NCBI RefSeq assembly: GCF_040938485.1 | Contig: NW_027270973.1 | Location: forward strand, 248,001 to 312,000 | Reading direction: 5' to 3' | Source of the DNA: Diadema antillarum | Taxonomy: Eukaryota | Length of the DNA: 64,000 nucleotides | Shown here: piece after piece, positions 38,081 to 63,521 of the stretch | Layout of the letters: every line of letters begins with the position of its first letter | Position numbering within the stretch: the first letter of the stretch is position 1 | Program-made: the position numbers and the translations under genes | The notes under the pieces: model-generated | Database searches by the model: none | What the model was told of the DNA's origin: nothing | What the model saw: the letters and a program-made list of their open reading frames with translations, nothing else

Positions 38081-38110
38081 TAATCCCATTGGTTACACAG
38101 TCTGACCAAT
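38081..38110 (+). promoter_or_regulatory. gene 1 proximal promoter: Otx-type TAATCC plus inverted CCAAT pair
   Basis: TAATCC at 38081-38086, ATTGG at 38088-38092 and CCAAT at 38106-38110. A TCF-type AACAAAG lies at 37870-37876. Confidence 0.5.
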
Positions 38111-38282
38111 CAACTATTAACAACCATACACACAGCACAGATAGGAATTATAGCTTTCCATGAAATGAAAACTACGGACCGGAATCAATTGGGAATCACA
38201 AGCAATTTGTCTTCTTACCTGGCTGAACGATTACCCGTCACTGATCCCTCAAATATCTCCAAGGCTATAATCGCTATCCGAC

Positions 38283-39353
38283 ATGGCTGATTCGTCGCTC
38301 TCACTTCTGCTTCACGTCCCGATGTCTGCTCCTTCCAAGCGACCTCGTCCTCGACGTAAGACTAGGTTCACCGCATGGCAACTCGAGAGACTGAAGGCCG
38401 AGTTCGACATCGACCAATATCCCGACATCGTTTCCAGGAAGAAACTGGCTACTACACTGGGCCTGAATGAAGACAGAATACACGTAGGTTTCATTGTCAT
38501 CTTAAATATAGTATCTGGCATGAAAAGATGTAGTCGACCAATATTTAAGTTATTGATTAATTCAAATAATTTGAATTGACTTTTAAATGACACTACATAT
38601 CAATATTGCTGATAGTCACAGAGTTTCTTAATTTGAAATATCCAGTTTAATTTTGTCCAATGTACGCATAACATTGGGGGCAAACAAAACAACCTCTCAT
38701 TTAAAATTCTTCTTGCTTTAACTGAATGAATACTGATTCAGTTTTTATATAAATCAAGCAGTAATCGAAGATGTGTAATGTCTTAAGAGGCAGAATTGAT
38801 TAGGCTTTGCATGAGGATGATGACATCAGACTGTTGATTTGGGGGGCTTAGCTTAATCTTGATTTCATCATTTTCTTTCCAGGTCTGGTTTCAGAACCGT
38901 CGCTCACGTCATCGTCCATCCTCCCTCAAGTCCAACTCGCCTCCCATCGACAACCGTCTCGGTGTTGCAGAAAGTGAGACCCACTGTCTGCGTAAGAGGA
39001 AATGCTTTGCTACAAGCGACGCCATCGACCAAGAGAACACACCGCCGCCGAAGAAGTTCTCCATCAACGACTCACCGATGTCAATCGATTTCCTGTCTCG
39101 TAGCAGCCGATCACCGGGTTCCTGGTCAATCTCCAACATCAGCGACGAGCGTGACATCATGAGTTTCCAGCAGACGACATCTCATCGAAAGCAGCAGGGC
39201 GCCACCAATCCCTTGATGTCTGTAGACTTTCTCTCCCGAAGCAGCCGACCGACTTCTTCGTATCCATCGCCATACCGTGAAGGGAGTCTCTACCACAGCC
39301 CGTCGCCATTCTACATGTTTGGTCACCCCTACGCCTTCGTTGTACCGTTTTGA
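38283..39353 (+). CDS. PRD-class (Q50) homeobox gene, pmar1/micro1-like, gene 1, 223 aa
   Basis: Exons 38283-38483 and 38883-39353 (GT-AG, phase-0 intron between homeodomain codons 46/47, typical of PRD class). The homeodomain ends VWFQNRRSRHR. There are two eh1-like repeats, [11 protein letters not shown] and [11 protein letters not shown]. Confidence 0.92.
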
Positions 39354-39704
39354 ATGCTGTGATGCTGCTGAACTTTCGAAGGACTGACGTATCACCATTG
39401 GAGTCTCTATTACCGCAAAGTTATAGACCATCGCCATCCTATGTATCATTAATTTTGTTAACGATTTCAGTATTTATTAATAGTCAGGCCTTGTGGATTC
39501 TGGACATTCGTCTTGACGACCTGTTCTGTGACGTGGAGCCACGGTTTTGTTTGTGTTATCATAGTAACGCAGCTTTGAACAGAATTCTGAGTTATGATTG
39601 TAAATAAATGCACCTGTCTATTACCAAATCAATTTCTTTGAACAATACATGTGTGGGTGGATCAATTCGTATAAATAGTCGCTTGTGTGTGTATGTGTTT
39701 GTTC

Positions 39705-39745
<41 letters not shown>

Positions 39746-40034
39746 ATAATGCTTTATCTGTATAGAATGTGTGTGCATTTGATGTATTTTGTTTCTGTTT
39801 TGATTTGTTTTTTTTTTCAAATCAGTATTACACAAACTTGCAAACGGACTATGGTATGAAAAGGCGAATACATACAACATTCTCATGAACACGGACTTAT
39901 GGCACACACTCATATATTACTTATATATATATATATATATATGATTATATATATATATACATATAGCAAGAAGTAAGCGTGTTATTCCAATAATATCAAC
40001 AGAACTCAAATCAGTATGAACTTGAGTTCTGTTC

Positions 40035-40037
<3 letters not shown>

Positions 40038-40085
<48 letters not shown>

Positions 40086-40086
40086 T
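40038..40086. repeat. (TA)n microsatellite
   Basis: Visible directly. Other simple repeats: (CA)n 9244-9288, (CT)n ~27900-27970, (GT)n ~44408-44441, (AGT)n ~46840-46885 and ~58945-59000, (TATG)n ~61940-61984, (TA)n ~62082-62122. Confidence 0.9.
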
Positions 40087-41171
40087 GAGAGAGATAAAGA
40101 TTAAGTTTAAGGGAAGACCGAGAGATCAAAGAAAGCAAAATAATGAAGTGTTTAGTCTTCTCATGCTTGGAAAGGTCATAATATGACATTAAAAAGTGTC
40201 CTGTTATAGACCTCTACACGCTATACATTCGAACAAACACCAATCTCCACAAGGAAACGGACACACAAAATTATTTCTAAACGTTCACAACCCAAGCAAT
40301 GAAGTACGTCTATACAATAATATGGCATTATGATATGTCCATGCGTGAACAAAAAATACGCACATTCAGCTCGTTTTTCTTCAGACGGAAATCATTTCCT
40401 TGTTGTCAAACCAGAATGACTTGACGCTTTCTTACAAAACCGGAATCGATATCAAGTAGCAATTACATAATTTCAGACGACATTTTCCGTTTAAAACTAT
40501 ACAGATATTCTATCATATTGTTAATGGCGTTATAACTTAAGTGACACGTGCAGAATACGGATGAAGAGTTGCTGTAAAATTATTCTTTTTTTCTTGAATC
40601 ACAGTTAGTAGTACGAGGTGAAGTTGCCATTTCGTCTTCTTATTGTCAATGGTTGCTGGTTTGCTAATTAATTGACTTTTGTGCGTGACGACCTCATCAG
40701 TGTGTGCTCTGGGTGAAACACGTCTCATTTAATTTCATCATGAGGCTTTAATATGTTTTATTCACTTTTATCTGCACGTATATTTACATAATTATGAACT
40801 TTTCCCTTCCATTTATCAGATTTAAAAGTTTTCACTTCTTCTCATCTATATTCTCTCTCTTATCAAAAAGCAGGTTTATACATACAAGCTTACATACATG
40901 ATACAGTGATATAATCATATACATACCCAACCAAATGCATTATGGTATGCTTACATAGTGCGCACACCGATACTTAGGACCTAGAGGATTGAATCAACAT
41001 CAGTTTACTGTATAGTAGATAATGACCCATCCTCTCAGTATAGTAATTGAACGTAACCTATGTCTAGCACTATCAGAACAATTTAACTTAACTGATGGAA
41101 AGATAACACGATTGACATACTGTGGCCATGATTGACAGGGATACTTTACGCCAAAATAATCTTCGGCAAAA

Positions 41172-41308
41172 CTTTGATCTCAACTCTTTGATAGGATATA
41201 CCTTTCTTCTGTGTGGGTTGTTCAAACAACAAACTTAGTTCTATACCATCAGGTCTTAAATTTCTCGCATCCCATCATGAACAAAGGCAAACGTGGGATT
41301 AGGGATTA
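41172..41308. promoter_or_regulatory. candidate TCF + Otx enhancer
   Basis: CTTTGAT at 41172 and 41186, AACAAAG at 41280, and GGATTA at 41296 and 41303, all within 137 bp. Confidence 0.5.
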
Positions 41309-41511
41309 GGATCACAATAATGAAGTGCTCATTTAGGGTGAGAAGAAAGCCACTGTCTCAACGTATTGTTTTGTGCGTCGTTTCAATTGCCGCACACTTC
41401 TCATCCTGTCAGTTTAGAATGGAACTATATCAGCCAGTGGGAGAACATACCCATGTGACAGATCACTTATAATACGGAACTACGTCCCAATCTGTGCCGT
41501 TATTTAATCTC

Positions 41512-41880
41512 ATTGGTCATTTAATTTGACCAATCAGACTTGAATGGAAACTAATGAACTTCCCATCAAAATCACTTTTACGGTGAATCGAATTAAAAAA
41601 GAATCACTCGGCTTCACATGTCAAAAGTTCTCCTCTTATACTACATTAAGGGTCTATCCACTTTCCAACATGGGTTATTTATCACACTCTCTTCTCGATC
41701 ACTAAACTCTATGTAAGCTATCGATAGTTACAAAGAGATCAGTGTTCTCGATCATACTTCAAAGTCCGTTCCTACCATCTACACAGCGACATCGACGCTT
41801 GACTACGTTTAGCAAATTGCAGGTTGAGATTATTGTTAAAGTGAGCATCAAATCCAACATCGAATATTATTCACACATGC
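41512..41880 (+). pseudogene. decayed pmar1-like promoter + exon 1 relic
   Basis: ATTGG-N13-CCAAT at 41512-41534. GTCCGTTCCTACCA (41764-41777) is identical to exon 1 of genes 2 and 4. 41787-41828 encodes RHRRLTTFSKLQVE (cf. [14 protein letters not shown] of gene 5). It is frameshifted and has no exon 2. Confidence 0.7.
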
Positions 41881-43011
41881 GTATTATATCATTACACAAT
41901 GGTCGACAATAGCGGTGACCAGGTGCCCTGGGACCACAAAAAAAAAATGTTGGGCCACCAAAATTAAGAAAAACAAACAATAAAGAACATTAAACGAATC
42001 GGACATGAGTTAAATGTGATTTGACAATTCAATGTTTCTCGTATTTTTTAAAGGCAAAAGCGTCGATGATGATAGTACCCCATATAAATTATTTAAACTT
42101 CGAATCTATTCATTTTCTCTATTTTTTTCATTAGTGGCCGTGTGTGAAGTTGTATCTAATGACAATTTTACAGTGCCTTTTTGGTTTGATTTTGACTGCA
42201 TTTACTAGGGTCATCTTGAGCATGGGGGAGAATTTGGTTTTGCTTTTCAAAACGATTTTCAGAGATGAACTATTTGGTGATTAAGTCTGACTGTTAGCCA
42301 AATTTACCTTTACGTGCAAAATTGCTGATACTCTTAAACGAAATACCTCCACCTTCAAAAATTATATATTTGCTATTTACTGATAATTCTATTAAAACAA
42401 AAACAAACAGCAACGTGACACTGAATCAAATCACACTCTGTCTGTCTGTACTAATTCAAATACCATACCGGGATGGTATCTAGGATCTGCAAATAGAACC
42501 ATGTTCTGTAATAATCGACTGTACGACGAACGCAGGGTTTAATCTATTGTTCTTGTACTTCATTTGTTCCTTGTCGATCTTAGGAAGTTGGTATACTACA
42601 AGGGTATTGTTTGGTTTGTCGGCAGCGAACAGACAATCAGACCGCTAGTGAACAAAGGAAAAGTCATAGCTCTCTTGTAACAACGTGTAATTTGCGACAT
42701 GGATTAGGACACTCGCACTTCCCTTTGCATGGCTGAAGTCGGTGGGCATTCATGAAACTAAAACTTTACTTCAGTCGCTAATGCTGTCACGCCTATTGGT
42801 CGGTTTATTGGACCAATCAAACAACTTTGCTCGTTGAGGGCTTGTGAAAGTGGTGCTTGGCTTCTCCAATTCATAACCCACTTAATCACTGCAAGACTAC
42901 CAGCTACTTTGGTACTATCACCATACCTCATTCAGATTTTATTGAAGTAAAGTCGCACCTCTGAGGTTTTTCCTACAAACCGGCATCTTTACAAAACCAA
43001 TCCAATTCACT

Positions 43012-44063
43012 ATGTCTGGTCAATCGCTCTCGATTCTCTCTCAAGTCTCGACGTCCGTTCCTACCAAAGGCCTTCGTCGTCGACGTCCGACCGTGTTCAC
43101 CGAATGGCAGCTGGAGAAGCTGAAGGCTGAATTCGACATCGACCGATATCCCGACATCGTTTCTAGAGAGAAACTGGCTGCCTCACTCGGCCTCGATGAA
43201 GACAGAATACAAGTATGTAAAGTAGATGTATAAGATGTATAAAACAAATGATGAAGCAAAGTTGGTTATCTCTTTTAATACTGTTTCGATATTACGGAAT
43301 GTAGATTGATGGTTTCAAATCACAGTTATCACTTCACTGACTGCTATTACAATGCAATACCTGATATGAATCAAAATTTGGGACTCAAACACTCCTAGCA
43401 CAACAGCGAGAATATGAATGACCGAGGTTAAGAAGCACGTCCTTTATGTTTTCCTCGACATTTGATGACTTTTTTTTTCTGGCAGTAACATGTTACGTTT
43501 CATGTTTAAAAAAAAATGTTTATGCATGAAGCAAAATGCTAACGTCAGATTTGTTCTTTGTTTATCTTCAGGTCTGGTTCCAGAATCGCCGTTCACGCCT
43601 TCGTCGAGCTTCACTCAACTCCCTCTCTGCTCAACCAGACACCAGCGACAACCAGATCAACAGGCCAACCGACATCAAGGGAACAGAGTCTTCATCCACA
43701 GGAAAGCGTAAGCGATCAACGGAATGCGACGTCATCGACCAGGAGAACACACCGCCGCCCAAGAAGTCCGCCATCAACGACTCACCGATGTCAATCGATT
43801 TCCTGTCTCGTAGCAGCCGATCACCGGGTTCCTGGTCGACTTTCCGCATCAGCCAGGAGCGTGACATCATCAGTTTGCAGCAGACGACATCTCATCGAAA
43901 GCAGCAGGGCGCCACCAATCCCTTGATGTCTGTAGACTTTCTCTCCCGAAGCAGCCGACCGACTTCTTCATATCCATCGCAATACCGTGAAGGGAGTCTC
44001 TACCACAGCCCGTCGCCATTCTACGTGTTTGGTCATCCTTATGTCTTCGTCGTTCCACTCTGA
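43012..44063 (+). CDS. pmar1: pmar1/micro1-family PRD-class homeobox repressor, gene 2 (subtype A), 230 aa
   Basis: Exons 43012-43212 and 43572-44063. The homeodomain is RRRRPTVFT...[11 protein letters not shown]...EDRIQ|VWFQNRRSRLRRAS, followed by two MS(I/V)DFLSRSSR eh1-like repeats. The symbol is family-level; orthology was not tested. Confidence 0.92.
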
Positions 44064-44403
44064 ACGCTGTGATGCCGCCACACTCATAGGAGTGACTGAA
44101 ATGTGATATTTCATTTCTCATATTGAGAAGTGTATTGGATTCTCTGCCAGCAAACAATGATAGAAGACTAACATTCTTCCGACTTCAGAACTCCGTTCCT
44201 CTTTTCTGAGACACTCGAGATGATTCAGACTTGGATTCCACAACATTGCTTTGTTTCTTTGTCTTTAATGTTTGATAATAAACATTACCGTTTCACGTTA
44301 AGATTTCATTCATTTCATCTTATCTCATTCCTATGGTATTTTTTAGTATTGCATAAGTTTATATTTGTTCATGGTTGTTTGGTTGTATGAGTCTCTGTGT
44401 ATG

Positions 44404-44445
<42 letters not shown>

Positions 44446-46898
44446 TGTAAACAAAGTAACAAAATTATTACTTGAATGCATGTGTGCTTGCATGTATGCA
44501 GTTATTGTACGTTTCATTCTTTTGTTGTTACAGTCACTGACAGGGAGATAAGGATAAAATCAATGCTCGCTGGTATTCGTGCATGATTGAAATTAGGTCT
44601 TAACTTCACAAATAACTTGATGAATTGGAGATAGGGATTAGAATTTTAGACAACTTTCGGGTCAACAACGAAGTGATGTAAACGGAATCTGGTATGGCAG
44701 AGAAATGCAAGGAATAATATTGATAGAATATACAGATGGTAAAAATTGACCAGTTTGATAGCAAGAAGACGTAGCTGCCTGCTCCATACGATATTGACGA
44801 ACATATGCACAACACATGCACACACAACACACAACACACAACACACAAACGTACACACACACACTCAAACAAACAAACATACAATCATTAACAAAAATAA
44901 AATCAAGCAATGATAAAAAAATACCATAGACATGTGCGCACACACAGTGGAATTGAAAATCACAAGAGGCACATGTCTACATTATTATTTTCACATCGCA
45001 TTGTATCAAACTCCTCAGATTCGTACTTAACAGTTTACATTGCCCAGCACAACTTATCAGATTAAATTCAATTCTAATGTAGGGTAATTAAAATGTAAAG
45101 AATTCGAAATTGAATAAAAAGTCAAATGATAAAATATTGAATATCAGCGCTCAATTCATGAAGTATAGGATGTACTCTGAACATTGTATTCTAACTTGGA
45201 TCAATGTTAGTAAGCGTACTTGCATGAGTTGAGCGAACTCATGAAGAACTAAACAAGTTTGCTTAGATATCAACCATGGTGAAACAGAGAACTTTAAGAT
45301 AATCATGTCTGTACTCTATTTGACTTATAAAAGAAGGACACTAAATTCCGGGCCAAATAACCGTTACATTAAGATCGAATAAATCAGAAAGTTGAAGATA
45401 TGTAAAAACGAAAATGTTTTAACGAAACAGGGATATGATTACTCTCGCAATAGAACATAAGAATGTATCTGGGAGATAACTTATCACTTCAGGATTCTCC
45501 CACTACCTTATGTATGAAATCATAACAAGAGCGCTCTTCCTGTCTAAAATTGAGCAGAATCGTGTTTTCTCAAAGATACAGTCCTGAAACAACTTGATGC
45601 GAAAGACACAAGTACTTGAAGCAGACATCGTCACCGAGTCCTGGTTTACTTATTACTTTTATTACTTAGTAATGGTTATCACTATTTGAGCTGTAGTAGA
45701 TAAGGAAGCAAGACCTTAATGTTAATGATGTTCATTAGCAAATCGGTAACCAGTGCAGATCTCTCAGTGGTAGATAGGCTGTGATGAAATAGAATTGGGA
45801 AAAATCAACGTTTAAGACTGATGAAATAATTATGGCACATAGATTGAATGTGAGTAAATTGTTTTGGTAACTTCCACACAAGATTTGGAAACACACATCA
45901 CTTGAGATGCCATTTTAACGAATTCAGTGATGTAGCGCTCTATCCATTTTCTAATTTTTCTTTCCATCCCCTTTCTTTCGATCAAGAAAGGATAGAGTAT
46001 GGGGTAGTTCCCAAACTGTGATCACTGTCACGTTAACATTCAGCACGCCTTGTGATCCACGAGCTCAACTAGAGCCGGATCTTCTTCAGATGCAATTTTT
46101 GAAAGCTCGCTTCCCTACTATACTCTGCCGACAAAGTAGCTGAACAGGAGCACAAGTCGAAGGTTAAGCGAATAGGCATATTACCGATTCCTTTGAAGGG
46201 ATCCAGATCAGGGGCAGTGGCTTTAAGAAGCACGACTTTTTATTGTTGATACTAAATTGTCATTAAAACTCTGATGGCTTCAAAAGAACTCGGTGCGTAT
46301 AGAATGTGTCGGGTGGCGACATGTCTATTCAGCCTGTCACTGCCTGTCGCTTGAATAGAGCGTTCAATGTTCTCATAGAACCGCTATTGATTCGGTATCG
46401 CCTTTAAACTACAATGGCATTCTGCCGCTACACTGTCTCTAACGAGATGAAAGTAAACCGCCTCGTTGGGTCACTCAATTAATCCCTTTTGAAAGTTGTA
46501 CAATGGAGGATTTCAATCTATGTCGGACCCTTGCACTTCTATATCGGCCAGTCCGCATCCTGTCAATCATACGTCTCACGCCAACCTATGGGGTTGATAA
46601 TATCACATCACAGCGGCACCACGAAATGTCACTGGATATACCTTAAGGCAGCCTGTATAAGCGTATAATAACGATGCTAACAACAGTGATGATTACCATG
46701 ATCAAATTATGATTATTCGTACTAATAATATCATCTTATTTTATAGCACAATTGTTATTACAATGTATAACCATTACTGTCGTATTAGTATCAGTATTGC
46801 GTAGTATTAACGGCGTAATAGTACTTGTATTTTACAGTATAGTAGTAGTAGTAGTAGTAGCAGCAGCAGCAGTAGTAGCAGTAGTGGTATCAACGTAG

Positions 46899-47921
46899 GC
46901 CTATCTAGTATAATTATAATCATCATCGTCTTCGCAGTCATACACGTGTATACGCGCAAAACGTCAGACACTTTGGACAATGTGACATGTTTTAAGCAAA
47001 CGCACGAAAATAAGACTCATATTGATTAAACGCAAGAATTGAAATAGCCTCAGTTTGTTTGTTTGTTTATTTTCTATCTGAGAAGATGGCTGGATAAAAT
47101 ATATTCAGCTATGCTAAGCTGGTCTTCCATGGGGTTCAGTTGGATGTGAGATGGGACCACTTCACCGCTTTAGCATCCTGCTCTTTGCGATGAATGAAAG
47201 AAGCGGGATCTTTTACTTGCATGAGTTTTGACTCTCATACACATGGGACCTCCATTTATTTTCTATGTCCAATCCGTGGGACAGAGTGTTTTGCCTCTTG
47301 CTAGAGGGGACGGTATGATTACACACAACATTGCTCAGTCCAGACTCGGGTTCGAACCCGAGTCGCTTGGGTCGGAGGTAGAAGCGCTACCGACTGAGCC
47401 GACTGAGCCTACCGACTGAGCCTATCTAGTATAATTATAATCATCATCGTCTTCGCAGTCATACACGTGTATACGCGCAAAACGTCAGACACTTTGGACA
47501 ATGTGACATGTTTTAAGCAAACGCACGAAAATAAGACTCATATTGATTAAACGCAAGAATTGAAATAGCCTCAGTTTGTTTGTTTGTTTATTTTCTATCT
47601 GAGAAGATGGCTGGATAAAATATATTCAGCTATGCTAAGCTGGTCTTCCATGGGGTTCAGTTGGATGTGAGATGGGACCACTTCACCGCTTTAGCATCCT
47701 GCTCTTTGCGATGAATGAAAGAAGCGGGATCTTTTACTTGCATGAGTTTTGACTCTCATACACATGGGACCTCCATTTATTTTCTATGTCCAATCCGTGG
47801 GACAGAGTGTTTTGCCTCTTGCTAGAGGGGACGGTATGATTACACACAACATTGCTCAGTCCAGACTCGGGTTCGAACCCGAGTCGCTTGGGTCGGAGGT
47901 AGAAGCGCTACCGACTGAGCC
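46899..47921. repeat. perfect 521-bp tandem duplication
   Basis: GCCTATCTAGTA starts at 46899 and 47420, and the two copies appear identical. The junction has short re-copied GACTGAGCC pieces. Confidence 0.92.
47054..47400 (-). mobile_element. tRNA-derived SINE (copy lacking the extreme 5' end)
   Basis: It has an (AAAC)n tail and the B box GTTCGAACC, and is identical to 47575-47921. Confidence 0.85.
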
Positions 47922-47931
47922 AACTCACCGT
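47575..47931 (-). mobile_element. full-length tRNA-derived SINE (~357 bp)
   Basis: Minus strand: A box TGGCTCAGTCGG, B box GGGTTCGAACCC and an AAATA(AAC)n-like tail. It is flanked by CCTCAG/CTTCAG. The paralogous site at ~59180 (GCCTCAG|CATGAC) is empty. Confidence 0.88.
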
Positions 47932-52592: not shown

Positions 52593-54832
52593 AGTCGATG
52601 ATGAGAGAAAAGTGCTTCGAATAAAGTGCTCTACGAAGATCGGTATCACGCGTCTTGACTTGCTGGGCTTGTGTCGAAAAGTGAAGTGCATAATTTTGGG
52701 ACCACTGTTGATCTTTACCCGATGAGAGAGATCAGTAATAAGAGTAATGGACTCCTCCTCCCACTGATGCTTGATTTTCATTGGTCGAAGTTGTACAACC
52801 AATCACTAAAGACAAAGGCGATGATGATTACTCGAAGATGACGCTACTATGGATTTGAGTATCCGTCGTTACGAACATCCAGCGTTTGAACGCGAGAACA
52901 ATAGGAAAGGGTATTAAAACCGCCCGCCCGCCCGCCTTCGCGAGCTCCGATTTAGAAACAATAGCTCTACCAATCAGGGTGGTTTTCAGAAGTCAGAGGC
53001 GGTAGGGAAGAAAGCTCTTCATGAATTTTGTTGGGAGCCGCAAAGGGACAAAAGACACAAAACTTTCTTTAGCTCATCTAGAGTCGCATAACTTAGATTC
53101 TGAACAATGATATTGGTATACTCAGGTAATGAAAGTGTAATGCAACCTGATGGGCGACGTTCGCGAGAGAGTGGAGGCATATCATTATACTCAATAATTC
53201 CAGAGAAGTGGAACATTTCTTGCTTTTTTTGACATAAAACTATCCTAATACTTTAGAGTGAGGTAGCCACGACATCACAAATCTTCCCTTATTATAGTTG
53301 ATGCATGAAAACATACTGGATTTTGTCTGGTCAGTATTTAACTTTTCAATTTCAATCTAAAAGCTGATTTCATTTCCCGACAAAACATAGGGTAAAAATG
53401 AACATTGTAGAATGAAAAAAATTATAATTGAGGAACTATAAAGTCATTAGACATTGTATTAATAAATCAGAAGTGGCCGAAATAAGGTATAACCTTGCGT
53501 AAAGTGCAAAAAATGGTGGGACCCTCTAAAAAGTAGAGCTTGTAGAATAAGACCCTCTGGTAGAAAACATCAATGGAGAAAAAAGAAGAGGGTGAAGTCT
53601 GGAAGCCCGATGAAAAATAGAGTAACAGACAAATACACTTACATAGATGGTAATAAACATGAAACGAGACTAGACAACAATAGAACTACTGAAGGAAATG
53701 TTGTAAGACACAAACAAACAAACAAACAAACTTTATAGAACATCAAATAAAGAAAGAATTATAGTTGTGCCAGTAATCACACAGTTATTTCAGTTGAAGA
53801 ACATGAGAGCATTCTTTTGCTGCAATAATCAATCAATTCATTAACATGATTTAAATGAAAGTTACACTGTGTACTTCACCTAAATTTTTATAATGATAAA
53901 TATTACGACTACTATCACAATTTTCTATGCATTTAATTCAGAAATTTCTGCATTCTACCCCCTCCACTTTCTATGTTTTCTTCTACTCCTTTTTTTTTGG
54001 GGGGGGGGGTGGGATTCTGATTATAATGATACTTTCACTTCTATATATGTATGTTTGATTTTGAGTGTATTTACTAGCGTCAAACTGGATGTATACCATA
54101 ATCACTTTCGCTGTTGTTGCACATAATATATATTATAATCGATGTAGATGAATAATTTCGAAAGCTCAGGTAAGGTAAATTCAGTATTAACTGGCAGATA
54201 CATTATCAACTAAAAGCCGTTACCAGCAAAGAGTATCATACATGGCTAGTATGGATGAGGTTTGTGCTTAGGTATCATTGGCGTTTAAAGCATATATCGG
54301 CGGCGAATTTCACTCAACTTTTGCATTGACGGGATGATCATTCCAAAAAAAAAAAAAATTAAACGACCTTCAACAAATGAAAAGAACAGTTCATTGTTCC
54401 TTAGTTTCAAAATGTGGATCAGCGGTAAAACTTTCGTGTACGCAGTAACGTTATGCCAGGCTATTGTTTCGTTTGTCGGCAGCGGATCGACAATCAGGCC
54501 GTCAACAGGTTAATGAACAAAAGGCAATGGTTCTCTTGTAATTTGCAGGCCGACAGGTATCCGGAAGATCCGCACTCCTGTTAAGATCAGCGATTGGCCG
54601 GTTTACCGGACCAATCATCAACGTGTCTTTGTTTAATTGTCAGTCGTGTGTAAGAGTGATTATTCGCGGCTTTGCTAATTCTTACTTATCTTTTCCCAAG
54701 TGAATCACAAGCTGGTGTCACACGCTACTTTAATACAGTCACTACATTCGTTCAGACTGTCTCGAAGTTAAGTCGTTTCTTTCACGTTTTTCCACAAACC
54801 GATTATTTTTACAAACCTAATCCCAATCCGGT

Positions 54833-55863
54833 ATGGCTGATTCACTGCTCTCCCTTCTCCCTCAAGTCTCGACGTCCGTTCCTACCAAGGGTCTTCGTCG
54901 TCGACGTCCGACCGTGTTCACCCAATGGCAGCTCGAGAGGCTGAAGGCTGAATTCGACATCGACCGATATCCCGACATCGTTTCCAGAGAGAAACTGGCT
55001 GCCGCACTCGGCCTCGATGAAGACAGAATACAAGTATGTAAAGCAAAGATGTATAAATGATGAAGTAAAGTTGATTTTCTCTTGTAATACTGTTTTGATA
55101 TTACTGAATGTAAATTAATGGTTTCAAATTACATCTATATTCTCATCGGCTGTTATTACAATGCAATACCTGAGATAGATGAAAATTTGGGACTCAAACA
55201 TTTCTAGCAAAGCGAGAATATAAATGGCCGAGGTTAAGAAGCACGTCCTTTATGTTTTCCTCGACATTTGGTGACTTCTTTCTGGCAGTAGCATGTTACG
55301 TTTTATGTTTAAAAAATGTTTGTGCATGAAGCAAAATGCTAACGTCAGATCTGTGATTTGTTTAACTTCAGGTCTGGTTCCAGAATCGTCGTACACGCCT
55401 TCGTCGAGCTTCACTCAACTCCCTCTCTGCTCGATCAGACATCAGCTACAACCAAATCAACAGGTCAACCGACATCAAGGGAACAGAGTCTTCATCCACA
55501 AGAAAGCGTAAGCGATCAACGGAATGCGACGTCATCGACCAGGAGAACGCCACGCCACCCAAGAAGTCCGCCATCAACGATTCACCGATGTCAGTCGATT
55601 TCCTGTCTCGTAGCAGCCGATTACCGGATTCCTGGTCGACTTTCCGCATCAGCGAGGAACATGACGTCATCAATTTGCCGCAGACGACATCTCATCGAAA
55701 GCGGCAGGGCGCCACCAATCCCTTGATGTCTGTAGACTTTCTCTCCCGAAGCAGCCGACCGACTTCTTCGTATCCATCGCCATACCGTGAAGGGAGTCTC
55801 CAACACAGCCAGTCGCCATTCTGCATGTTTAGTCATCCTTATGTCTTCGTCGTTCCACACTGA
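54833..55863 (+). CDS. pmar1: pmar1/micro1-family PRD-class homeobox repressor, gene 4 (subtype A), 230 aa
   Basis: Exons 54833-55033 and 55372-55863; exon 2 was translated by hand and has no stop before 55861. The homeodomain ends VWFQNRRTRLRR, with two [11 protein letters not shown] repeats. The symbol is family-level. Confidence 0.92.
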
Positions 55864-58800
55864 CTGTTGTGAAGCTGCCGCACTTTCATAGGAGTGACTG
55901 AAATGTGATACTGTATATCATTTCTCATATTGAGAAGTTTGTTTGACACTTTCCTGCAAACAATTTTGTAAACAAGAATGCTTCCGACTTCAGAACACTC
56001 TTCCTCTGTTCTGAGACACTCGCGATGAATTCAGCAACATTGTTTTGTTTCTTTATCTTCAATGTTTGATAATAAACATTACGGTTTGACATTGGGATTT
56101 CATTCATTTCATCTTATCTTATTCCTCTGGTATTTTTGAGTATTGCTTAATTTTATATTTGTTCATGGTTGTTTGTTTGTTTGTTTGTGTGTTTGTTTGT
56201 TTGTTTGAGTCTCTGTGTGTGTGTGTGTGTGTGTTTGGTGTAACCCAAGTAACACAATGATTACTTATATGCGTGTGTGCTTGCTTGTACGTATAGTTAT
56301 GTATGTGTCGTTCTTTTGTTGTTACAGTGGGCTCGACTTTGAGATAAGGGTAAATGCTCGCCGGTATTCATGCTTGATTGAAATTAGGTCTTCATAAATA
56401 ACTTAATGAATTTTAGAGAGGAACTAGAATTTTTAGTTAACTTTGGATCAACAATGAAGTGATATAAACGGAATCTGGAATGAGAAATACAAGGGAGAAT
56501 TGATAAAATGTACAGATGGTAAATATTGACAAATTTGATACTAAGAAGTCACAGCTGCCTGTCATGATACGATATTGATGAACACGTGCACAACACATAC
56601 ACACCGAACACACACACACACACACATACACATACACACACACACAGACGCACGCAAAGACATTCAAACAAACAAACAAACAGTCATGAACAAAAATAAA
56701 ATCAAGCAATACTCTAAAAAAAAAAATACAATAGACATATGAGCACACACAGTCCGACAGTGGTAATTCAAATCACATAATTTATCTACATTTTTATTGT
56801 CACATCGCATTGTATCAAGCTCCTCAGTTTTGTACTTCTAGTTTTCATTGCCCAGCAGAACTTAAAGATTAAATTCAATTCAAATGTAGGATGATTAACA
56901 TTTTAAGAATTCGAAGAATTGAATAAAAGTTCAAAATTTAATGATAAAAATATAATATTGAATATCAGCATTCAATTCATACAGGATGGGATGCATTATT
57001 AACATTGTATTCTAACTTGGATCAATGTTAGTCGACGTACTTGCATATGAAGTTCAGTGAACTCGTGAAGAACTAAACAAGTTTGCTTGAATATCAACCA
57101 CTGTGAAACAGAGAAGCTAAAGATAATCATGTCTGTGCTCTTTTTGACTTATAACAAAAGGACACTAGATTCCGGACCAAACAAACCGTTACATTAAGAT
57201 AGAATAAATCAGAAAGTCGAAGAAAACTAAAAACGAAAATGTTTTCACGAAACATGGATATAATTACATTCCCTAATAGAAAATAAGAATGTATCTGGGA
57301 GATGACTTATCACTTTACGATTCTCCTGATACATTGTATGAAATTATGACAAGAGCGTCCTCATTGTTACAAGTCATGACAGTCCTGAAACAAGTTGATG
57401 CGAAAGACGCAAGTTCTTGAAACAGGTCACGACATCATCATCGAGTCCTGTTTTTATTACGTAATTAGTCAGTAATATAGTTATTACGATTTGAGTTGTA
57501 TGAGATCTGTAATCATCGATAAGGGAGCAAGACCTTAATGTTAATGATGTTTGTTGGAATTTTGGAAACATGTGCAGATCTCTCCGTGGTGGATAGGCTG
57601 TGATAAAAAGGAACATAAAAAAAACAGCGTTTAAGACTGATGAAATAATTACGCCAAATAGATTGAATACGAGTAAATTGTCTTTGCAACTTTTACACAT
57701 AATTTGGAAACAAAGACTACTCCCAATGCCATCTTAACGAATTCAGTGATGAAACGTTTTATCCACTTTCTACCTTTTCTTCCCACTCCCTTTCTTTCGA
57801 TCAAGAAAAGATAGAGTATTGGGGTAGCTTCCAAACTGGGATCACTGTCACGCTATACCATTCAGTACGCCTTGTGATTCACGAGCTCAACTATATAGAG
57901 CCGGATCTATTTCAGACGCAATTTTTGCACCCTCGCTTCCCTACTCTTTACTCTGTCGACAAAGTAGCTGAACAAAAGGACAAGTCGAAGGTTAAGCGAT
58001 TTAAGGCATATTACCGATTCTTTTGAGGGGATCAAGATCAGGGGCAGTGGCTTTAAGAAGCACAACTTTTTATTGTTGATACTAAATCGTCATTAAAACT
58101 CTGATGGCTTCAAAAGCACTCGGTGCGTATAGCATGTGTCGGATGGTGACATGTCTATTCAGCCTGTCGCTTGAATAGAGCGTTCAATGTTCTCATAGAA
58201 TCGCTATTGATTCGGTCTCGCCTTTAAACTACAATGGCATTCTTCCGCTACACTGTCTCTAACGAGATGAAAGTAAACCGCCTCGTTAGGTCACTCAATG
58301 AATCCCTTTTGAAAATTATACAATGAAGGATTTCAGTCTATGTCGTACCCTTGCACCTCTGTATCAGTCAGTCAGCATCCTGTCAATCATACATCTCACG
58401 CCAACCTATGGCGTTGATAATCATATCACAGCGAGCACAAACCACATGAAAATGTCACTGGATATACCTTAAGGCAGCGTACATTAGCGATAATAATGAT
58501 AAAAATTGCAGTGATGATTACCATGATAAAGATTAATTATGATTCATCGTACTATCATCACTTTACCATATATTTGCTGTAACCATTAACATCGTAGAAT
58601 AGTATTAGTGTTGTGTAGTATTAGCGGAGTAATTTTAATTGTATTTCACAGTGTTTGTTTGCTTGTTTGTTTGCTTTTATTTCTGCATTCAATCAGATGC
58701 AATTTGAATGCAAACTTCAAAAAGTACAAAGACAAAGAATAACAAGTGCAGTGAAATAAATCGATAACAGTACATAAATAGCTTCACATAGGTGATTGCA

Positions 58801-58946
58801 TTGAGCAATGTAGATACACAGAAACATAAAATAAAATATACAGTATTTTTCAGTAAACAATAGAGATAATTGAATGCAGGAGACCACCATCATAAGCGAT
58901 TAAGCTTGAAATGGATGGAGGCCTCACTATTTCACAGTGTAATAGC

Positions 58947-58986
<40 letters not shown>

Positions 58987-61940
58987 TAGTAGGAGTAGTA
59001 GAAGTAGTAGCAGTAGTAATAGTAGTATCAAAGTAGGCCTATAGTAGTATAATTATAATCATCGTCTTCACAATCAGATACGTGTATAAGCGCAAAACAT
59101 CAGACACTTTGGACAATGTACATGTAAAAACAAATGCACCAAAATAAGACACAATATACAGTAAACTTTATCAGAATTGAAATAGCCTCAGCATGACAAT
59201 TGAGTCAATTACTTGTTTTCCCAAATCGTGAACAAATATACAGATAGCAATATCTGAATGAATTGTCTTTAGTTTACGATTATGTTGAATAAAAAAGCAG
59301 ATTTACCATAAAGTGAGTGATCAGTTGTAAAGACAAACAAAGGAATATGCGTCCGGAAGTATCATTACGTCTTCAGTTTAGATGTAGACTACGCGTGCGA
59401 TCCTAAAGTTTAGAAGTTTCAAATTCGTGTGCCCCTTTTGTAACCCTGTAAATTAAATTCCTTTCATAGACTGGAACATTGTAGAAGTATAGGCATCAGG
59501 AATTTAAAATGCTATACAACCCTCACACGGATATACATGCGAACAATCAAACAAGTAACCAAACAAACAAACAAACAAACAAACAAACCCTCAATTTGAA
59601 CACAGTCGTGCACACTCATTATCACTTTATACACCCACTGGCAGGAGTACATATAGGACCGCTCACACGCGCGCGCGCACACACACGCGCACACACACAC
59701 GCACACACACACACACACACACACACGTCTATTAATCTACAACTATTTATCATAATATAAGCACGTTGCATTGCCTAATTCACTGCTCCGCACACTTAGC
59801 TTCTCATGTTGCTTCTTTTCTTCCTTCCTCGTTATAGCTTCCAATCGAAGATGCCATTAACAAATTAAGTTAGTAATGTGTACAGGACAAGTTTCAATGA
59901 CAGATTGCCCATTTCTGTGCATGTTCCCTTCTTTTTATTTCTATTTTTTTGAGACTGCCATCACTTTAATGCATATTCTAAATACACAGACTCCTGCATT
60001 TTTTCTCTTAAAATGAAAAATAAAAGTAGCATTGACGTCTTAGATTTCATTTAGTGTTGTTGAAGTATGATTATTGTGATCATTATACTGTGATATACTC
60101 TGTAGATGTTTTTGTTTTGTGTAGATATTATTATCCATCGCCATTTTCATGCGTGATTTCCACGGAAATGCAGAGAAAATATGAAAGTGAACTGAAATGA
60201 GTTTAGCTCACATGTCAAATCACATAAAACCTGGCGTAGCTACGAGACCTGAAATTCATCAGCTTGCCCACTTTTGCTTTACCCATTTTTTCTCATATTC
60301 AATCAGATAGGGCCTACATCGTGTTAACCTCGATTCAGCAAGGACTGTATTTTCAATATAATTGAATTCTACTAGAGTGTAGTAGCCAGTTCTCTGGGTA
60401 GCAGTGATGCCGGGATATTACTCGATGTCGAATGATGTTCCGAGCTTCAATAGGTCAAATTACCTGACCAGTGAGGTTAACGAGATGACCGAGACCTGAA
60501 AAGAGCCATACTACCTTTAATCCCCTAATGGTCAGCCGTCAGGCGACTAAAGCCAACAATAGCTGACCAATGCTCAGCTTGCTTTTGATCCATGCGATTA
60601 TGACTTGTGCATTTAACGAGTGTAATCAAACGCGCAGAGTTCAATGGAACCAGAGCGTCTTACGCTGCATCAAACTTTGCCAAGATTCTTTTCAGCTCTT
60701 GAAAGGATCATTCCAGGCTAATGACGATGAGATAAAGCGATTTGATCGAAGTTTGCCGCTGATGAACCTAGACACAAAGTGAACACCCCTGACTGTCAAT
60801 CAACCCAAACGTGTCAGTCGCAGATTCGAGAAGAACTGCAACTACGTGATGTTGCATGACTTAGATTCATTATGTTTAAATAGAAGAAAGTGATAGATAT
60901 ATGATAGGACATAATGGATATCAGTCACGCGTCATGTGAGCAAATGATATAAAATATTCTCGTGACAATTTAAACTCCTGTGCACACAGTATCGCTACAC
61001 TGATAATAATTTCTTTATACTTCATACAATTCATAACGGGCTCAACAGAAATCTGAGATCTGTATTCATATCTCCCTGAGCGTCCACCTAAAACATTCAT
61101 TATAATCATACCTCTGATTTGAATTTAGTTTCTCCTTTATAGCTGTCATTCTGTTTTGGGTGATTACATTTATTTTCCGAGGCATTGGCGACTGTCGACA
61201 TGATAATTCGGAACGGACCCGAGCAGCAGCATGGATCCAAGGTCGTTTCAATCTAGAAATAAAGCGACTACATTGCACAATAACCATTTTCAATTGCTCA
61301 TGTGAAGTATCTTGCCTCCATATATTATAATGAGTCAATAATTCAATCTGCTTGACTATCGAAAGCAAACATGTAATATATATGTTGGGGTTTTTTGCTG
61401 CAGGTGAGAGTTTTTTTGTTTGTTTCTTATTTGTTTGGTTGTTGTTTTTTTAAGGAAAGGATGGGTCTGTGCAAAGTGAAATAGATTTTGAGCAAACTAT
61501 CGCCTCTAGGAATCTATGATCATGCATTTTGATATTTGCGATACCAATAGGTCATTTTTCCAATAATAAACCTCGAGACCAATAATTAACGTCTTGATTT
61601 ATTCGGTCCTAATGAAATAATGTAGGACTAGTGTAATCAACTCTTGTTTGCATGCAACTTATGTTGCTGCTATTTCGAGCAAGCCTCAGACAACCTGATT
61701 TGTGTTTTGATTTGCATTTCTGTTACGTGCTATTACGTGTAAATATGTGTAAATGTATTTATGGTATAAACACACTACTGGTAATTGATCTTCTCTATGT
61801 TACGCTGTAAATAATCTTCATCTTCGCTTTCACACTCATACTTTATGTCTTAAAGATAGTGATTAATAACACTCTGGTCAATTGTTTTCCATGTTTCAAA
61901 CTAAACATCACTAAGTCCACACCATCGAATTATATGCATG

Positions 61941-61974
<34 letters not shown>

Positions 61975-62080
61975 TGTATGTATATGATTATATGCATATA
62001 TAGTCTATAATCATAAACATACGTGCATACATATTATAATCCGATGGTGTAATGTATATCAGTGATAGACCTAATATCTG

Positions 62081-62129
<49 letters not shown>

Positions 62130-62462
62130 TTATATATGTTTGTGTGTGTGTGTTCACAGTATGTATATATGTTTAGAGAGAGGGGAGATACACACACACA
62201 CGCACACAAAGACGTACACACATCATTTCATACACCAACCTACACTTGAAAACGACTCTTAAAAAGGACGAATACGAGAATGGCAAATAATATTCAGAGG
62301 GATGTGCTCTTTTTGTACATTTTAATATAGACAATGACACGACAGTAGAAGCATAGCTGAAGGCAAGATCATGATAGAAATCAAAATAAACGTCCATTAA
62401 GGAGAGTGTTCATGTGTTGTACAATCCTTTTCTCGAATGTTCTCTTGAGTTCATTCAAAAGT

Positions 62463-63521
62463 TCAGGATGGTATGATGTAGACGAAACGATGACCAATAG
62501 ACGTGTAGAATGGAGCTGGTGTGTTACAGTAGTAGAGACTCGCTTTTACCGATGGATACGAAGAGGTCTGTCGGCTGCTTCGGGAGAGGAAGTCTACAGA
62601 CATCAAGGGATTGGTGGCGCCCTGCTGCTTTCGATGAGATGTCGTCTGCTGCAAATTGATGATGTCACGCTCCTTGCTGATGCGGAAAGTCGACCAGGAA
62701 TCCGGTGATCGGCTGCTACGAGACAGGAAATCGACTGACATCGGTGAGTCGTTGATGGCGAACTTCTTAGGTGGCGGCGTGATCTCCTGTTCGATGACAT
62801 CGAATGTCGAAGATCGCTTTCGCTTCCTACTGTATTCCACCTCAGGTTCTGCGAACTCGTTGTCGATGCGGCTCATCCCGGTAACTGATTGAACTGGATC
62901 GGAAGTACGAACGGTTCGACGATAACGTGCACGACGATTCTGGAACCAGACCTGCCCATGGAGAAAAGAACACATCACAATTTGTTTAGATTTCATGTAT
63001 AAGAGCACATTAACATCATCATCATCATCATCGTCGTCGTTATAACAATGATAATACACTTAATATTCTCCATGACACGTTTCTTTTACTGTGTATAATA
63101 TTATAATAGACTACCATTTTTGAGCCATTAAGATCCTCTTCATTAATGAAAGTAACATAATTAATAGTTTTAGTACTTGGATAAATCACGATAAATAGCA
63201 AATTGGCTCATATCCTTGAGCCCAGAATACACTGACACTTACTTTCAGTAAGAAGTCTGTTAGAAAATATTTACTAATTGACAAAATAATAACGAGACAT
63301 GTATAAAACAAAATATTGCTTACTCGAATCCTGGCTTCGCTGAGACCAAATGCTGCGGCCAGCTTCTCTCTAGAAACGATGTCAGGATATCGGTCTCTGC
63401 TGAATTCGACCTCGAGTCTCTCCAGCTGCAGTTTGGTGAACTTGGTCAGACGTCGACGACGTGAATGTTCAGTTGAAACGGACGACGACTTGTGGGCGAG
63501 CAACCAGAGGAAATCAGCCAT
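62463..63521 (-). CDS. pmar1/micro1-like PRD-class homeobox gene 5 (subtype B), 228 aa
   Basis: Exons 63521-63324 and 62951-62463. The homeodomain is [20 protein letters not shown]...EARIR|[12 protein letters not shown], with two [11 protein letters not shown] repeats. Confidence 0.92.

What the first reader, a model, noticed from the sequence alone, without database searches (positions are those of the whole stretch)
38283..63521. pmar1-like array built from a duplicated tail-to-tail A/B two-gene cassette
Seen: five intact genes oriented + + - + -. Genes 2+3 and 4+5 form an ~11-kb direct repeat, each pairing a subtype A (plus) and a subtype B (minus) gene convergently, so genes 3 and 4 are head-to-head 2.2 kb apart. 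The A and B homeodomains are only 42/60 identical. Gene 1 is a third variant, two relics exist, and the repeat continues past the window. Established: pmar1/micro1 are tandemly multiplied PRD-class repressors at the top of the micromere double-negative gate (repressing hesC). Inference: the unit of amplification here is a heterologous gene pair, suggesting co-dosed repressors with distinct targets or domains, possibly a pmar1-related subfamily that is not yet described.
Basis: partly seen in the sequence, partly recalled or inferred. Interest (0 to 1): 0.8.

Follow-up and report, generated by a model that had tools for sequence, protein, structure and literature searches.

The report
Diadema pmar1 cluster: amplified convergent gene pair
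This is one end of the pmar1/micro1 homeobox gene cluster of the sea urchin Diadema antillarum, where a tail-to-tail pair of two diverged paralogues is the repeated unit (two copies here, five in Diadema setosum); it is a new structural variant of a known multigene family, and its function is untested.

Summary
The window is Diadema antillarum contig JBFRCO010000085.1. It carries five intact two-exon paired-like homeobox genes (+ + - + -), each with a GT..AG intron at homeodomain position 46/47.

- **Repeat:** genes 2+3 and 4+5 lie in a direct repeat with an 11.8-kb period and 78-91% identity. Each unit is a convergent A-> <-B pair.
- **Divergence:** A and B homeodomains share 42-44 of 60 residues. 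Gene 1 is a third type (C).
- **Family:** all three types carry the Pmar1/Micro1 C-terminal architecture. In the full-length tree they form one Diadema clade beside camarodont and sand-dollar Pmar1/Micro1.
- **New evidence:** the same two-unit layout is on a ~95% identical second contig, probably the other haplotype. D. setosum has five tandem A/B units next to the same flanking gene, so the pair really is the amplified unit.
- **Mosaic genes:** A versus B synonymous divergence is about 0.7 in the 5' half but 0.155 in the C-terminal half.
- **Correction:** the array ends at gene 5. The repeat stops 57 bp past the window, followed by an INPP5K-like gene.

Expression, targets and co-dosage could not be tested, because no RNA run was listed. 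First readers also noted pmar1-like clusters on two other pieces of this genome (s1-220796, s1-215136).

The parts
38283..39353 (+). Gene 1, subtype C (223 aa). Exon 1 38283-38483, intron 399 bp, exon 2 38883-39350 plus stop.
   Evidence: Identical to P0050 / XP_071485450.1. Falls in the C clade, 100/99.
43012..44063 (+). Gene 2, subtype A (230 aa). Exon 1 43012-43212, intron 359 bp, exon 2 43572-44060 plus stop.
   Evidence: Identical to P0001. Pfam Homeodomain E=2e-11 on exon 1.
51523..52592 (-). Gene 3, subtype B (226 aa). Exon 1 52592-52395, intron 389 bp, exon 2 52005-51526 plus stop.
   Evidence: Identical to P0045 / XP_071485452.1. Falls in the B clade, 100/99.
54833..55863 (+). Gene 4, subtype A (230 aa). 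Exon 1 54833-55033, intron 338 bp, exon 2 55372-55860 plus stop.
   Evidence: Identical to P0046 / XP_071485453.1.
62463..63521 (-). Gene 5, subtype B (228 aa). Exon 1 63521-63324, intron 372 bp, exon 2 62951-62466 plus stop. Last gene of the array.
   Evidence: Identical to P0044 / XP_071485454.1. The next gene is an Exo_endo_phos2+SKICH gene.
42903..53134 (.). Repeat unit 1: A-> (g2), 7.5-kb tail-to-tail spacer, <-B (g3) with about 540 bp of B upstream sequence.
   Evidence: Self-BLAST. Orthologous to D. setosum unit 1 in the A half, 100/100.
54724..64000 (.). Repeat unit 2: A-> (g4), 6.6-kb spacer, <-B (g5). Homology ends at 64057, 57 bp past the window.
   Evidence: Collinear at 92-97% with contig 528. 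Resembles D. setosum units 2-5.
52593..54832 (.). 2,240-bp head-to-head spacer between g3 (B) and g4 (A). It includes the unit junction at 53134-54724. Candidate bidirectional control region (inference).
   Evidence: Coordinates. The spacer is conserved at 81-88% with the D. setosum B1-A2 spacer. A and B upstream regions share no detectable similarity.
37726..44452 (+). Head-to-tail C->A-> unit (g1, g2). It is paralogous to a second C->A-> unit about 65 kb to the left on the same contig, so g2 belongs to two overlapping duplicated units.
   Evidence: L008 versus the window: 9432-11158 ~ 37726-39396 (83.8%), 14871-15898 ~ 40085-41117, 17854-19136 ~ 41935-43221 (81.9%), 19630-20489 ~ 43517-44378.
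43704..44063 (+). C-terminal ~115 codons, shown here for g2 (equivalents: 38994-39353, 51523-51879, 55504-55863, 62463-62825). This stretch is homogenised among subtypes A, B and C.
   Evidence: DNA identity between subtypes is 87-92% here, while exon 1 is not alignable by BLASTN. A x B dS is 0.155 here against 0.73 in the 5' half. Orthologue dS is the same in both halves. Alignment.
4713..5520 (+). Composite homeobox relic, outside the finding's coordinates. It has a 13/13-residue match to the B linker (4713-4751), an A/C-like helix-1 fragment (4788-4832) and a helix-2/3 fragment (5467-5520).

Best explanation
The region is the distal end of the Diadema antillarum pmar1/micro1 homeobox cluster, next to an INPP5K-like gene.

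**Shown.**
- Five intact genes encode Q50 paired-like homeodomain proteins. They have the Pmar1/Micro1 layout: MAD N-terminus, homeodomain (HD) split by an intron at 46/47, an RKRK..TPPxKK stretch, two [M/F]S[V/I]DFLSRSSR motifs, and an HPYVF-type end.
- They fall into three HD subtypes (A, B, C), and each subtype is present in both D. antillarum and D. setosum.
- A unit of about 11.5 kb, holding a convergent A-> <-B pair, is present twice here and on the second D. antillarum contig. It is present five times in D. setosum.
- The A half of unit 1 is orthologous between the species. The first duplication therefore predates their split, and D. setosum units 2-5 are a later amplification of the unit-2 type.
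- The genes are mosaics. The 5' halves of A and B are old (dS about 0.7). The C-terminal halves coalesce at dS 0.155, only slightly older than the species split (dS about 0.11).
- Each subtype's HD is under purifying selection (dN/dS 0.25 for A, 0.39 for B).

**Inferred.**
- The units multiplied by unequal crossing-over between neighbouring units.
- The 3' coding halves were homogenised by gene conversion.
- The proteins act as early zygotic transcriptional repressors, like Pmar1/Micro1, with the SVDFL motifs as eh1-like co-repressor motifs. Multiple copies would raise transcript dose during the short cleavage cycles.
- B is a functional paralogue with a diverged HD and a promoter unrelated to A's.
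- In unit 2 and in D. setosum units 2-5, the A gene keeps only 109 bp of its original upstream sequence. It sits head-to-head with B across a 2.2-2.9-kb spacer, so these pairs may be co-regulated.
For: - **Gene models:** splice sites and ORFs; identity to NCBI models.
- **Family:** Pfam Homeodomain; best named relatives are Micro1/Pmar1 of Scaphechinus, Hemicentrotus and S. purpuratus, over the full length of exon 2; shared motif architecture.
- **Tree:** Diadema clade 98/97; B 100/99, C 100/99 and A 92/97, each with both species.
- **Repeat:**
- **Second contig:** same INPP5K - B - A - B - A order at 92-97% identity.
- **D. setosum:** five A-> <-B units followed by the INPP5K-like gene. All five A copies and four of five B copies have intact frames and GT/AG sites.
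- **Unit trees:**
- **dS and dN/dS by region:**
- **HD conservation:** each subtype's HD is nearly invariant across species.
- **Promoter classes and the second C->A unit:**
- **Literature:** multicopy clustered hbox12/pmar1/micro1 genes with two exons, mixed orientation, bigenic units and copy-number variation are described in P. lividus (PMC5370098).
Against: - No expression evidence was available. No RNA run was listed, and the NCBI models carry no UTRs. That B, or any copy, is transcribed is therefore unproven.
- The full-length tree is biased towards Diadema monophyly, because the C-terminal half is homogenised.
- On the HD alone, a tree with B outside all other euechinoid pmar1 is not rejected (AU p=0.43).
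- The B half of the unit groups by species, in conflict with the A half. The order of duplications rests on the A half plus an assumption of conversion in the B half.
- Overall dN/dS is high (0.5-0.7), so constraint outside the HD is weak.
- One D. setosum B copy is frameshifted.
- The eh1-like reading of the SVDFL motifs rests on resemblance only.
Confidence: 0.75

Rival explanations
1. B is an old, separate pmar1/phb-related lineage that predates the split of Diadema from other euechinoids. It only looks Diadema-specific because its C-terminal half was overwritten by gene conversion from A/C.
For: - The HD-only AU test does not reject B lying outside A+C+other euechinoid Pmar1 (p=0.43).
- The B HD shares FS..RYPDI, TEARI and RRAR with the cidaroid Prionocidaris protein. 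Identity is 39/60 for g3 (36/60 for g5), against 36-37/60 for A.
- The C-terminal half is demonstrably homogenised.
- The B stem branch is long, 0.35-0.42.
Against: - A x B synonymous divergence in the HD is only about 0.67, roughly six times the D. antillarum/D. setosum value. That is far from the saturation expected for a split I recall as older than 200 My.
- The best HD-only tree still keeps Diadema together (78/96).
- Searches with B, full length and residues 1-84, found no closer HD outside Diadema. The second search saw only 22 candidates.
Confidence: 0.12
2. The A/B pair is a functional unit kept at 1:1 dose. For example, A and B might bind palindromic paired-type sites as a heterodimer, or be driven together from the shared head-to-head spacer. 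Selection would then explain why the pair is what gets amplified.
For: - The pair is the repeated unit in two species, 2 and 5 copies.
- The head-to-head spacer is retained in both species.
- Both HD subtypes are conserved across species.
- Paired-class homeodomains are known to bind cooperatively as dimers (my knowledge, not tested here).
Against: - Unequal crossing-over between tandem units amplifies whatever lies in the unit, with no need for selection.
- A-type genes also occur without B partners, in the C->A units to the left, so the dose is not 1:1 over the whole cluster.
- One D. setosum B copy is broken.
- The spacer is no better conserved than neutral flanks, 81-88%.
Confidence: 0.12
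3. B copies are non-functional passengers, silent or decaying paralogues carried along when the A genes are amplified.
For: - There is no expression evidence.
- Three of five D. setosum B copies are not annotated, and one is frameshifted.
- Whole-gene dN/dS is about 0.5.
Against: - Eight of nine B copies examined have intact frames and canonical splice sites: two here, two on contig 528 and four of five in D. setosum.
- The B HD dN/dS is 0.39. The B HD is nearly invariant across species despite dS of about 0.11.
- The A/B split is much older than the species split, yet the frames are still open.
Confidence: 0.1
4. The duplication is an assembly artefact, two haplotypes laid in tandem.
For: The assembly does hold a second contig, about 95% identical, for this locus, so haplotypes were not fully collapsed.
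Against: - The two units differ by 9-22%, much more than the 3-8% between the two contigs.
- Both contigs carry both units, separated by a unique 1.6-kb junction.
- D. setosum has the same junction and more units.
Confidence: 0.01

Closest known systems
Pmar1 (S. purpuratus) / Micro1 (H. pulcherrimus), the paired-like homeodomain repressors at the top of the micromere double-negative gate
   Same: - Q50 paired-like HD with the RRRRPT N-terminal arm.
- Two exons, with the intron in the homeobox.
- Same C-terminal motif order, including both [10 protein letters not shown] motifs.
- Multicopy and clustered.
- 45-49% identity over the full length.
   Different: - HD identity is only 33-42/60.
- Three HD subtypes coexist in one cluster.
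- Expression, beta-catenin/TCF dependence and hesC repression are untested in Diadema.
hbox12/pmar1/micro1 multigene family of Paracentrotus lividus (Cavalieri et al. 2017, PMC5370098)
   Same: - Many copies, mixed orientations, bigenic units and copy-number variation.
- Species-specific clades in trees.
- Subfamilies with different promoters.
   Different: - In P. lividus the bigenic units are head-to-tail. The proteins are described as extensively similar, especially in the HD, and the subfamilies differ mainly in cis-regulatory DNA.
- In Diadema the repeated unit is a convergent pair whose two members differ at 16-18 of 60 HD positions.
phb (pmar1-related homeobox) genes of cidaroids and non-echinoid echinoderms (Yamazaki et al. 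2020, Development, dev182139; not held in the library, cited via PMC8505446 and PMC13701902)
   Same: Same wider family. The Prionocidaris protein (P0059) shares the HD (31-39/60) and the first SIDFL motif.
   Different: The cidaroid protein's second motif is degenerate and its C-terminus differs. Diadema A, B and C all have the euechinoid two-motif layout.

Membership tests
pmar1/micro1/hbox12 family (echinoid paired-like homeobox repressors) | Paired-like Q50 homeodomain whose nearest named relatives are Pmar1/Micro1 | tested here: met
   Pfam PF00046 on exon 1. The nearest non-Diadema hits are Micro1/Pmar1 of Scaphechinus, Hemicentrotus and S. purpuratus, for both A and B queries. Q50, N51 and R53 are present.
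pmar1/micro1/hbox12 family (echinoid paired-like homeobox repressors) | [quoted passage not shown] | tested here: met
   All five genes have a GT..AG intron of 338-399 bp between HD residues 46 and 47. The two-exon structure is described in PMC5370098.
pmar1/micro1/hbox12 family (echinoid paired-like homeobox repressors) | Conserved C-terminal region with two [M/F]S[V/I]DFLSRSSR motifs | tested here: met
   The alignment with S. purpuratus, H. pulcherrimus, S. mirabilis and L. variegatus proteins shows both motifs in A, B and C. That they are eh1-type co-repressor motifs is an inference.
pmar1/micro1/hbox12 family (echinoid paired-like homeobox repressors) | Multiple clustered copies in the genome | tested here: met
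   Five genes in 25 kb here, at least three more about 65-80 kb to the left on the same contig, and ten in 60 kb of D. setosum.
pmar1/micro1/hbox12 family (echinoid paired-like homeobox repressors) | Phylogenetic placement with euechinoid pmar1 rather than cidaroid or non-echinoid phb | tested here: inconclusive
   In the full-length tree the Diadema clade (98/97) sits beside camarodont and Scaphechinus sequences. The cidaroid row is a long branch that joins Scaphechinus weakly (92/30), so the root is unsure. The HD-only tree is unresolved.
pmar1/micro1/hbox12 family (echinoid paired-like homeobox repressors) | Transient early zygotic expression in micromeres, dependent on beta-catenin/TCF | not testable with these tools
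   No RNA run was listed. TCF-like words lie at about -104 and -207 of g4-type A genes, and none within 900 bp of B genes. The counts are near chance.
pmar1/micro1/hbox12 family (echinoid paired-like homeobox repressors) | Represses hesC (double-negative gate) and converts cells to skeletogenic fate when mis-expressed | not testable with these tools
   Needs embryo injection experiments.

The most novel reading that the evidence does not exclude
A and B are a functionally coupled pair of Pmar1-type repressors with diverged homeodomains. They would act as heterodimer partners on palindromic paired-type sites, or be co-transcribed from a shared bidirectional spacer. Selection for matched dose would then explain why the convergent pair, and not a single gene, was amplified repeatedly in the Diadema lineage. 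That would add a second, previously unseen component to the top of the micromere gate in an early-branching euechinoid.
Probability: 0.12. Interest if true: 0.75.

Novelty: new variant of a known kind. Interest (0 to 1): 0.48.

Why it matters
pmar1 is the switch that starts skeletogenic micromere specification in euechinoids. How that switch arose from phb genes is an active question in evolutionary developmental biology. Diadematoids branch early among euechinoids, and I found no paper describing their pmar1 genes.

This locus shows three features not reported for the family. The cluster holds three conserved homeodomain subtypes, rather than near-identical copies. One subtype (B) exists only as the partner in a convergent pair that is itself the amplified unit. 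The genes are mosaics of old 5' halves and recently homogenised 3' halves.

The locus gives concrete reagents for asking whether the Diadema gate uses one repressor or several: the subtype-specific 5' halves and two promoter classes. It is also a clean case of birth-and-death evolution combined with partial concerted evolution in a developmental regulator.

If B proves silent or redundant, the finding reduces to ordinary tandem-array dynamics.

Tried and rejected
- **RNA evidence:** The look-up of sequencing runs on 51400-55900 listed no run. Read laying and a read-depth check were therefore not possible.
- **Other features in the units:** Rfam and tRNA scans of 36-64 kb found nothing.
- **B-like homeodomains elsewhere:** the search restricted to B residues 1-84 saw only 22 candidates, all Diadema. 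This is weak evidence of absence.
- **HD-only phylogeny:** 60 columns could not place B.
- **Promoter words:** the TCF/Otx scan of 900 bp upstream gave counts near chance. I treat it as a lead only.
- **Literature:** the key paper, Yamazaki et al. 2020, is not held. No paper linking Pmar1 to eh1/Groucho surfaced.
- **Synonymous constraint as the cause of the low A x B dS in the C-terminal half:** rejected, because orthologue dS is the same in both halves (0.08-0.13 against 0.11-0.12).
- **Haplotype artefact:** rejected.
- **A third unit to the right of the window:** rejected.

Full report
**Origin.** The exon-2 product of gene 2 is 100% identical to an NCBI protein of Diadema antillarum. A look-up of gene 5 places the window on GCA_040938485.1 contig JBFRCO010000085.1. 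Record position equals window position plus 248,000, on the same strand. The window has no N runs.

**Gene models.** Six-frame reading and splice-site inspection give five intact genes:

| Gene | Strand | Exon 1 | Exon 2 (CDS without stop) | Protein |
|---|---|---|---|---|
| g1 | + | 38283-38483 | 38883-39350 | 223 aa |
| g2 | + | 43012-43212 | 43572-44060 | 230 aa |
| g3 | - | 52592-52395 | 52005-51526 | 226 aa |
| g4 | + | 54833-55033 | 55372-55860 | 230 aa |
| g5 | - | 63521-63324 | 62951-62466 | 228 aa |

Each gene has a GT donor straight after homeodomain (HD) residue 46, an AG acceptor before VWFQNRR, and a TGA stop. Every spliced product equals an NCBI model, all named 'uncharacterized protein'. 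Exon 1 matches Pfam Homeodomain.

**Repeat.** Self-BLAST shows unit 1 (42903-53134) and unit 2 (54724 to 64057) as collinear direct repeats. Identity is 78-91% and the period is 11,821 bp. Each unit holds an A gene on the plus strand and a B gene on the minus strand, tail to tail, 6.6-7.5 kb apart. The g3 and g4 start codons face each other across 2,240 bp.

**Where the array ends.** I extended the sequence with the 9.5 kb to the right of the window (L001, which matches the window exactly over the overlap). Homology to unit 1 stops 57 bp after the window end. A palindromic repeat element follows at 64322-64888. After it comes a 130-bp remnant of the spacer, and then a gene whose product has Exo_endo_phos2 and SKICH domains. 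By domain architecture this is INPP5K-like, which is my inference. There is no third unit, so g5 is the last gene.

**Family.** Searches with the A exon-2 product and with full-length B return the same set. Diadema proteins come first. Next come 'Micro1/Pmar1 related' of Scaphechinus mirabilis, the Hemicentrotus pulcherrimus homeobox protein, S. purpuratus 'paired class homeodomain repressor' and Lytechinus proteins, at 43-49% identity over 99-100% of the query. A Prionocidaris baculosa Micro1/Pmar1-related protein is further out. The alignment shows the same order of features in A, B, C and the named proteins:
- the MAD start;
- the HD;
- RKRK..CDV and TPPxKK;
- the first [M/F]S[V/I]DFLSRSSR motif;
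- LQQTTSH;
- a second [13 protein letters not shown] motif;
- an H(P/R)(Y/F)V(F/Y) end.

The cidaroid protein keeps only the first motif well. I read the SVDFL motifs as eh1-like co-repressor motifs by resemblance to the motif class reviewed in PMC1310626. That is inference.

**Phylogeny.** A careful maximum-likelihood tree of 44 full-length proteins puts all Diadema genes in one clade (98/97). The clade has three subclades: B (100/99, stem 0.35), C (100/99) and A (92/97). Each subclade holds both D. antillarum and D. setosum sequences. On the 60 HD columns alone, Diadema monophyly is still in the best tree (78/96). A tree with B outside everything except the cidaroid is not rejected (AU p=0.43).

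**Second contig and D. setosum.**
- Contig JBFRCO010000528.1 (513 kb) has the order INPP5K-like, B, A, B, A. It is collinear with the window at 92-97% identity. This is most simply the other haplotype. It shows that the two-unit structure is not an assembly slip.
- In D. setosum (OZ188189.1, 5,571,945-5,643,375) I joined four overlapping loci with no conflicts and mapped the genes by tblastn.
- There are five tandem A-> <-B units with periods of 10.5-17.6 kb. Head-to-head spacers are 2.4-2.9 kb. The INPP5K-like gene follows.
- All five A copies and four of five B copies have open frames and canonical splice sites. B4 has a frameshift just after the HD. B2 and B3 are intact but not annotated.

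**History of the units.**
- A DNA tree of the A gene plus 3.7 kb downstream joins D. antillarum unit 1 with D. setosum unit 1 (100/100). It sets D. setosum units 2-5 apart from all D. antillarum units and D. setosum unit 1 (100/100). At least two units therefore existed before the species split, and the extra D. setosum units arose later.
- By BLAST identity, D. setosum units 2 and 5 match window unit 2 better than unit 1 (88% against 82%). The extra units thus look like copies of the unit-2 type.
- The tree of the B gene with its flanks instead groups by species (100/100). I attribute this to conversion or unequal exchange among units; it leaves the order of events partly open.

**Mosaic genes.** I computed Nei-Gojobori estimates by region.

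| Comparison | HD dS | 5' half dS | C-terminal ~115 codons dS |
|---|---|---|---|
| A versus B | 0.67 | 0.73 | 0.155 |
| Same subtype, D. antillarum versus D. setosum | 0.10-0.11 | 0.11-0.12 | 0.08-0.13 |

- The A versus B C-terminal value is the same within species (0.145-0.164) and between species (0.164).
- The synonymous rate is not lower in the C-terminal half. The low A x B value there therefore reflects recent shared ancestry (gene conversion or a chimeric origin) dating to shortly before the species split.
- g1 (C) shows the same pattern against A: HD region 0.44-0.56, linker about 1.8, C-terminal 0.18-0.23.
- HD dN/dS between species is 0.25 for A and 0.39 for B. Each subtype's HD is almost invariant across species. 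Both are under purifying selection.
- The A/B 5' divergence is about six times the species divergence. From memory (not checked here), D. setosum split from other Diadema roughly 10 My ago, and diadematoids split from camarodonts more than 200 My ago. This points to an origin of the subtypes within the diadematoid lineage.

**Wider cluster.**
- About 65-80 kb to the left on the same contig lie A (P0002), C (P0052) and A (P0010), all on the plus strand.
- The stretch from that C gene to the following A gene is paralogous to window 37726-44452 (g1 to g2) at 80-86%. It is interrupted by the same satellite-bearing element seen at 20.7-25.9 kb of the window. A head-to-tail C->A unit is therefore also duplicated, and g2 belongs to both kinds of unit.
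- A genes have two kinds of upstream DNA. The g2 type is shared with P0010 and P0002. The g4 type shares only 109 bp before the ATG with g2, and then continues into the spacer shared with B.
- A and B upstream regions have no detectable similarity.

**Comparison with the literature.**
- Cavalieri et al. 2017 (PMC5370098) describe about thirty two-exon hbox12/pmar1/micro1 genes in P. lividus.
- Those genes are often divergently oriented, and some form head-to-tail bigenic units.
- They also show copy-number variation, species-specific clades and subfamilies that differ in promoters, while the proteins stay very similar.
- The Diadema locus fits this family behaviour. It differs in two ways: the repeated unit is a convergent pair, and its members have clearly diverged homeodomains.
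- I found no paper on Diadema pmar1. A 2026 review only counts D. setosum homologues.

**Not testable here.** Expression, TCF dependence, hesC repression and any A/B interaction could not be tested. No RNA run was listed.

**Verdict.** The subtypes are best seen as lineage-specific offshoots of pmar1. The functional reading (co-dosed repressors with different targets) remains open.

Noticed in passing
window 9531-10695 and 21469-25462; L008:11642-14142: A satellite array of about 4 kb. Self-matches recur at offsets of about 165 bp, so the period is probably near 165 bp. An inverted partial copy lies about 11 kb away, with inverted flanking repeats (12605-13400 ~ 20306-19495; 11066-11871 ~ 21460-20648). 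The same element sits just downstream of a C-type pmar1 gene about 70 kb to the left. This agrees with first-reader note s1-229968.
   Followed up: partly
window 39684-39742, 44396-44448, 51206-51246, 56169-56241, 62191-62222: Every one of the five genes, whatever its subtype, has a (TG)n-type microsatellite 240-330 bp downstream of its stop codon in the sense orientation. BLAST finds no A/B similarity past the stop codon. This may be a conserved 3' UTR feature or a recombination-prone tract, and could be linked to the homogenised 3' coding halves.
   Followed up: no
window 46899-47404 and 47420-47925: A 506-bp tandem duplication at 99.8% identity lies inside the unit-1 spacer only. Related copies lie inverted at extended coordinates 68532-68844, inside the INPP5K-like gene region. 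Probably a young repeat-element duplication.
   Followed up: no
contig JBFRCO010000528.1 (L002, L007): A 513-kb contig of the same assembly is collinear with this locus at 92-97% identity and has the same flanking gene. It is probably an uncollapsed second haplotype. Allelic proteins differ by up to 10% (g3 versus P0018).
   Followed up: partly
D. setosum OZ188189.1, in my reverse-complemented join: B copies at 20892-21981, 38530-39620 and 48867-49962: Two intact B-type genes are missing from the annotation, and a third has a frameshift just after the homeodomain. Unit 3 carries an insertion of about 6 kb in its spacer.
   Followed up: partly
window 4713-5520 and 41787-41828: One composite homeobox relic: a perfect 13-residue B-linker patch next to degraded A/C-like HD fragments. 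It matches note s1-229898. There is also a weak B-like N-terminal-arm fragment 1.2 kb upstream of g2.
   Followed up: partly
extended coordinates 64322-64888 (just right of the window) and window 13780-14367: A 570-bp element that matches its own reverse complement at 78% (palindromic, MITE-like). It lies about 265 bp beyond the point (64057) where the unit-2 homology breaks off.
   Followed up: no
window 43880-43990 and equivalents in g1, g3, g4, g5: About 100 nt encoding [28 protein letters not shown] are almost invariant across all subtypes and both species. Gene conversion plus protein constraint probably suffices to explain this, but an RNA-level role was not excluded.
   Followed up: partly
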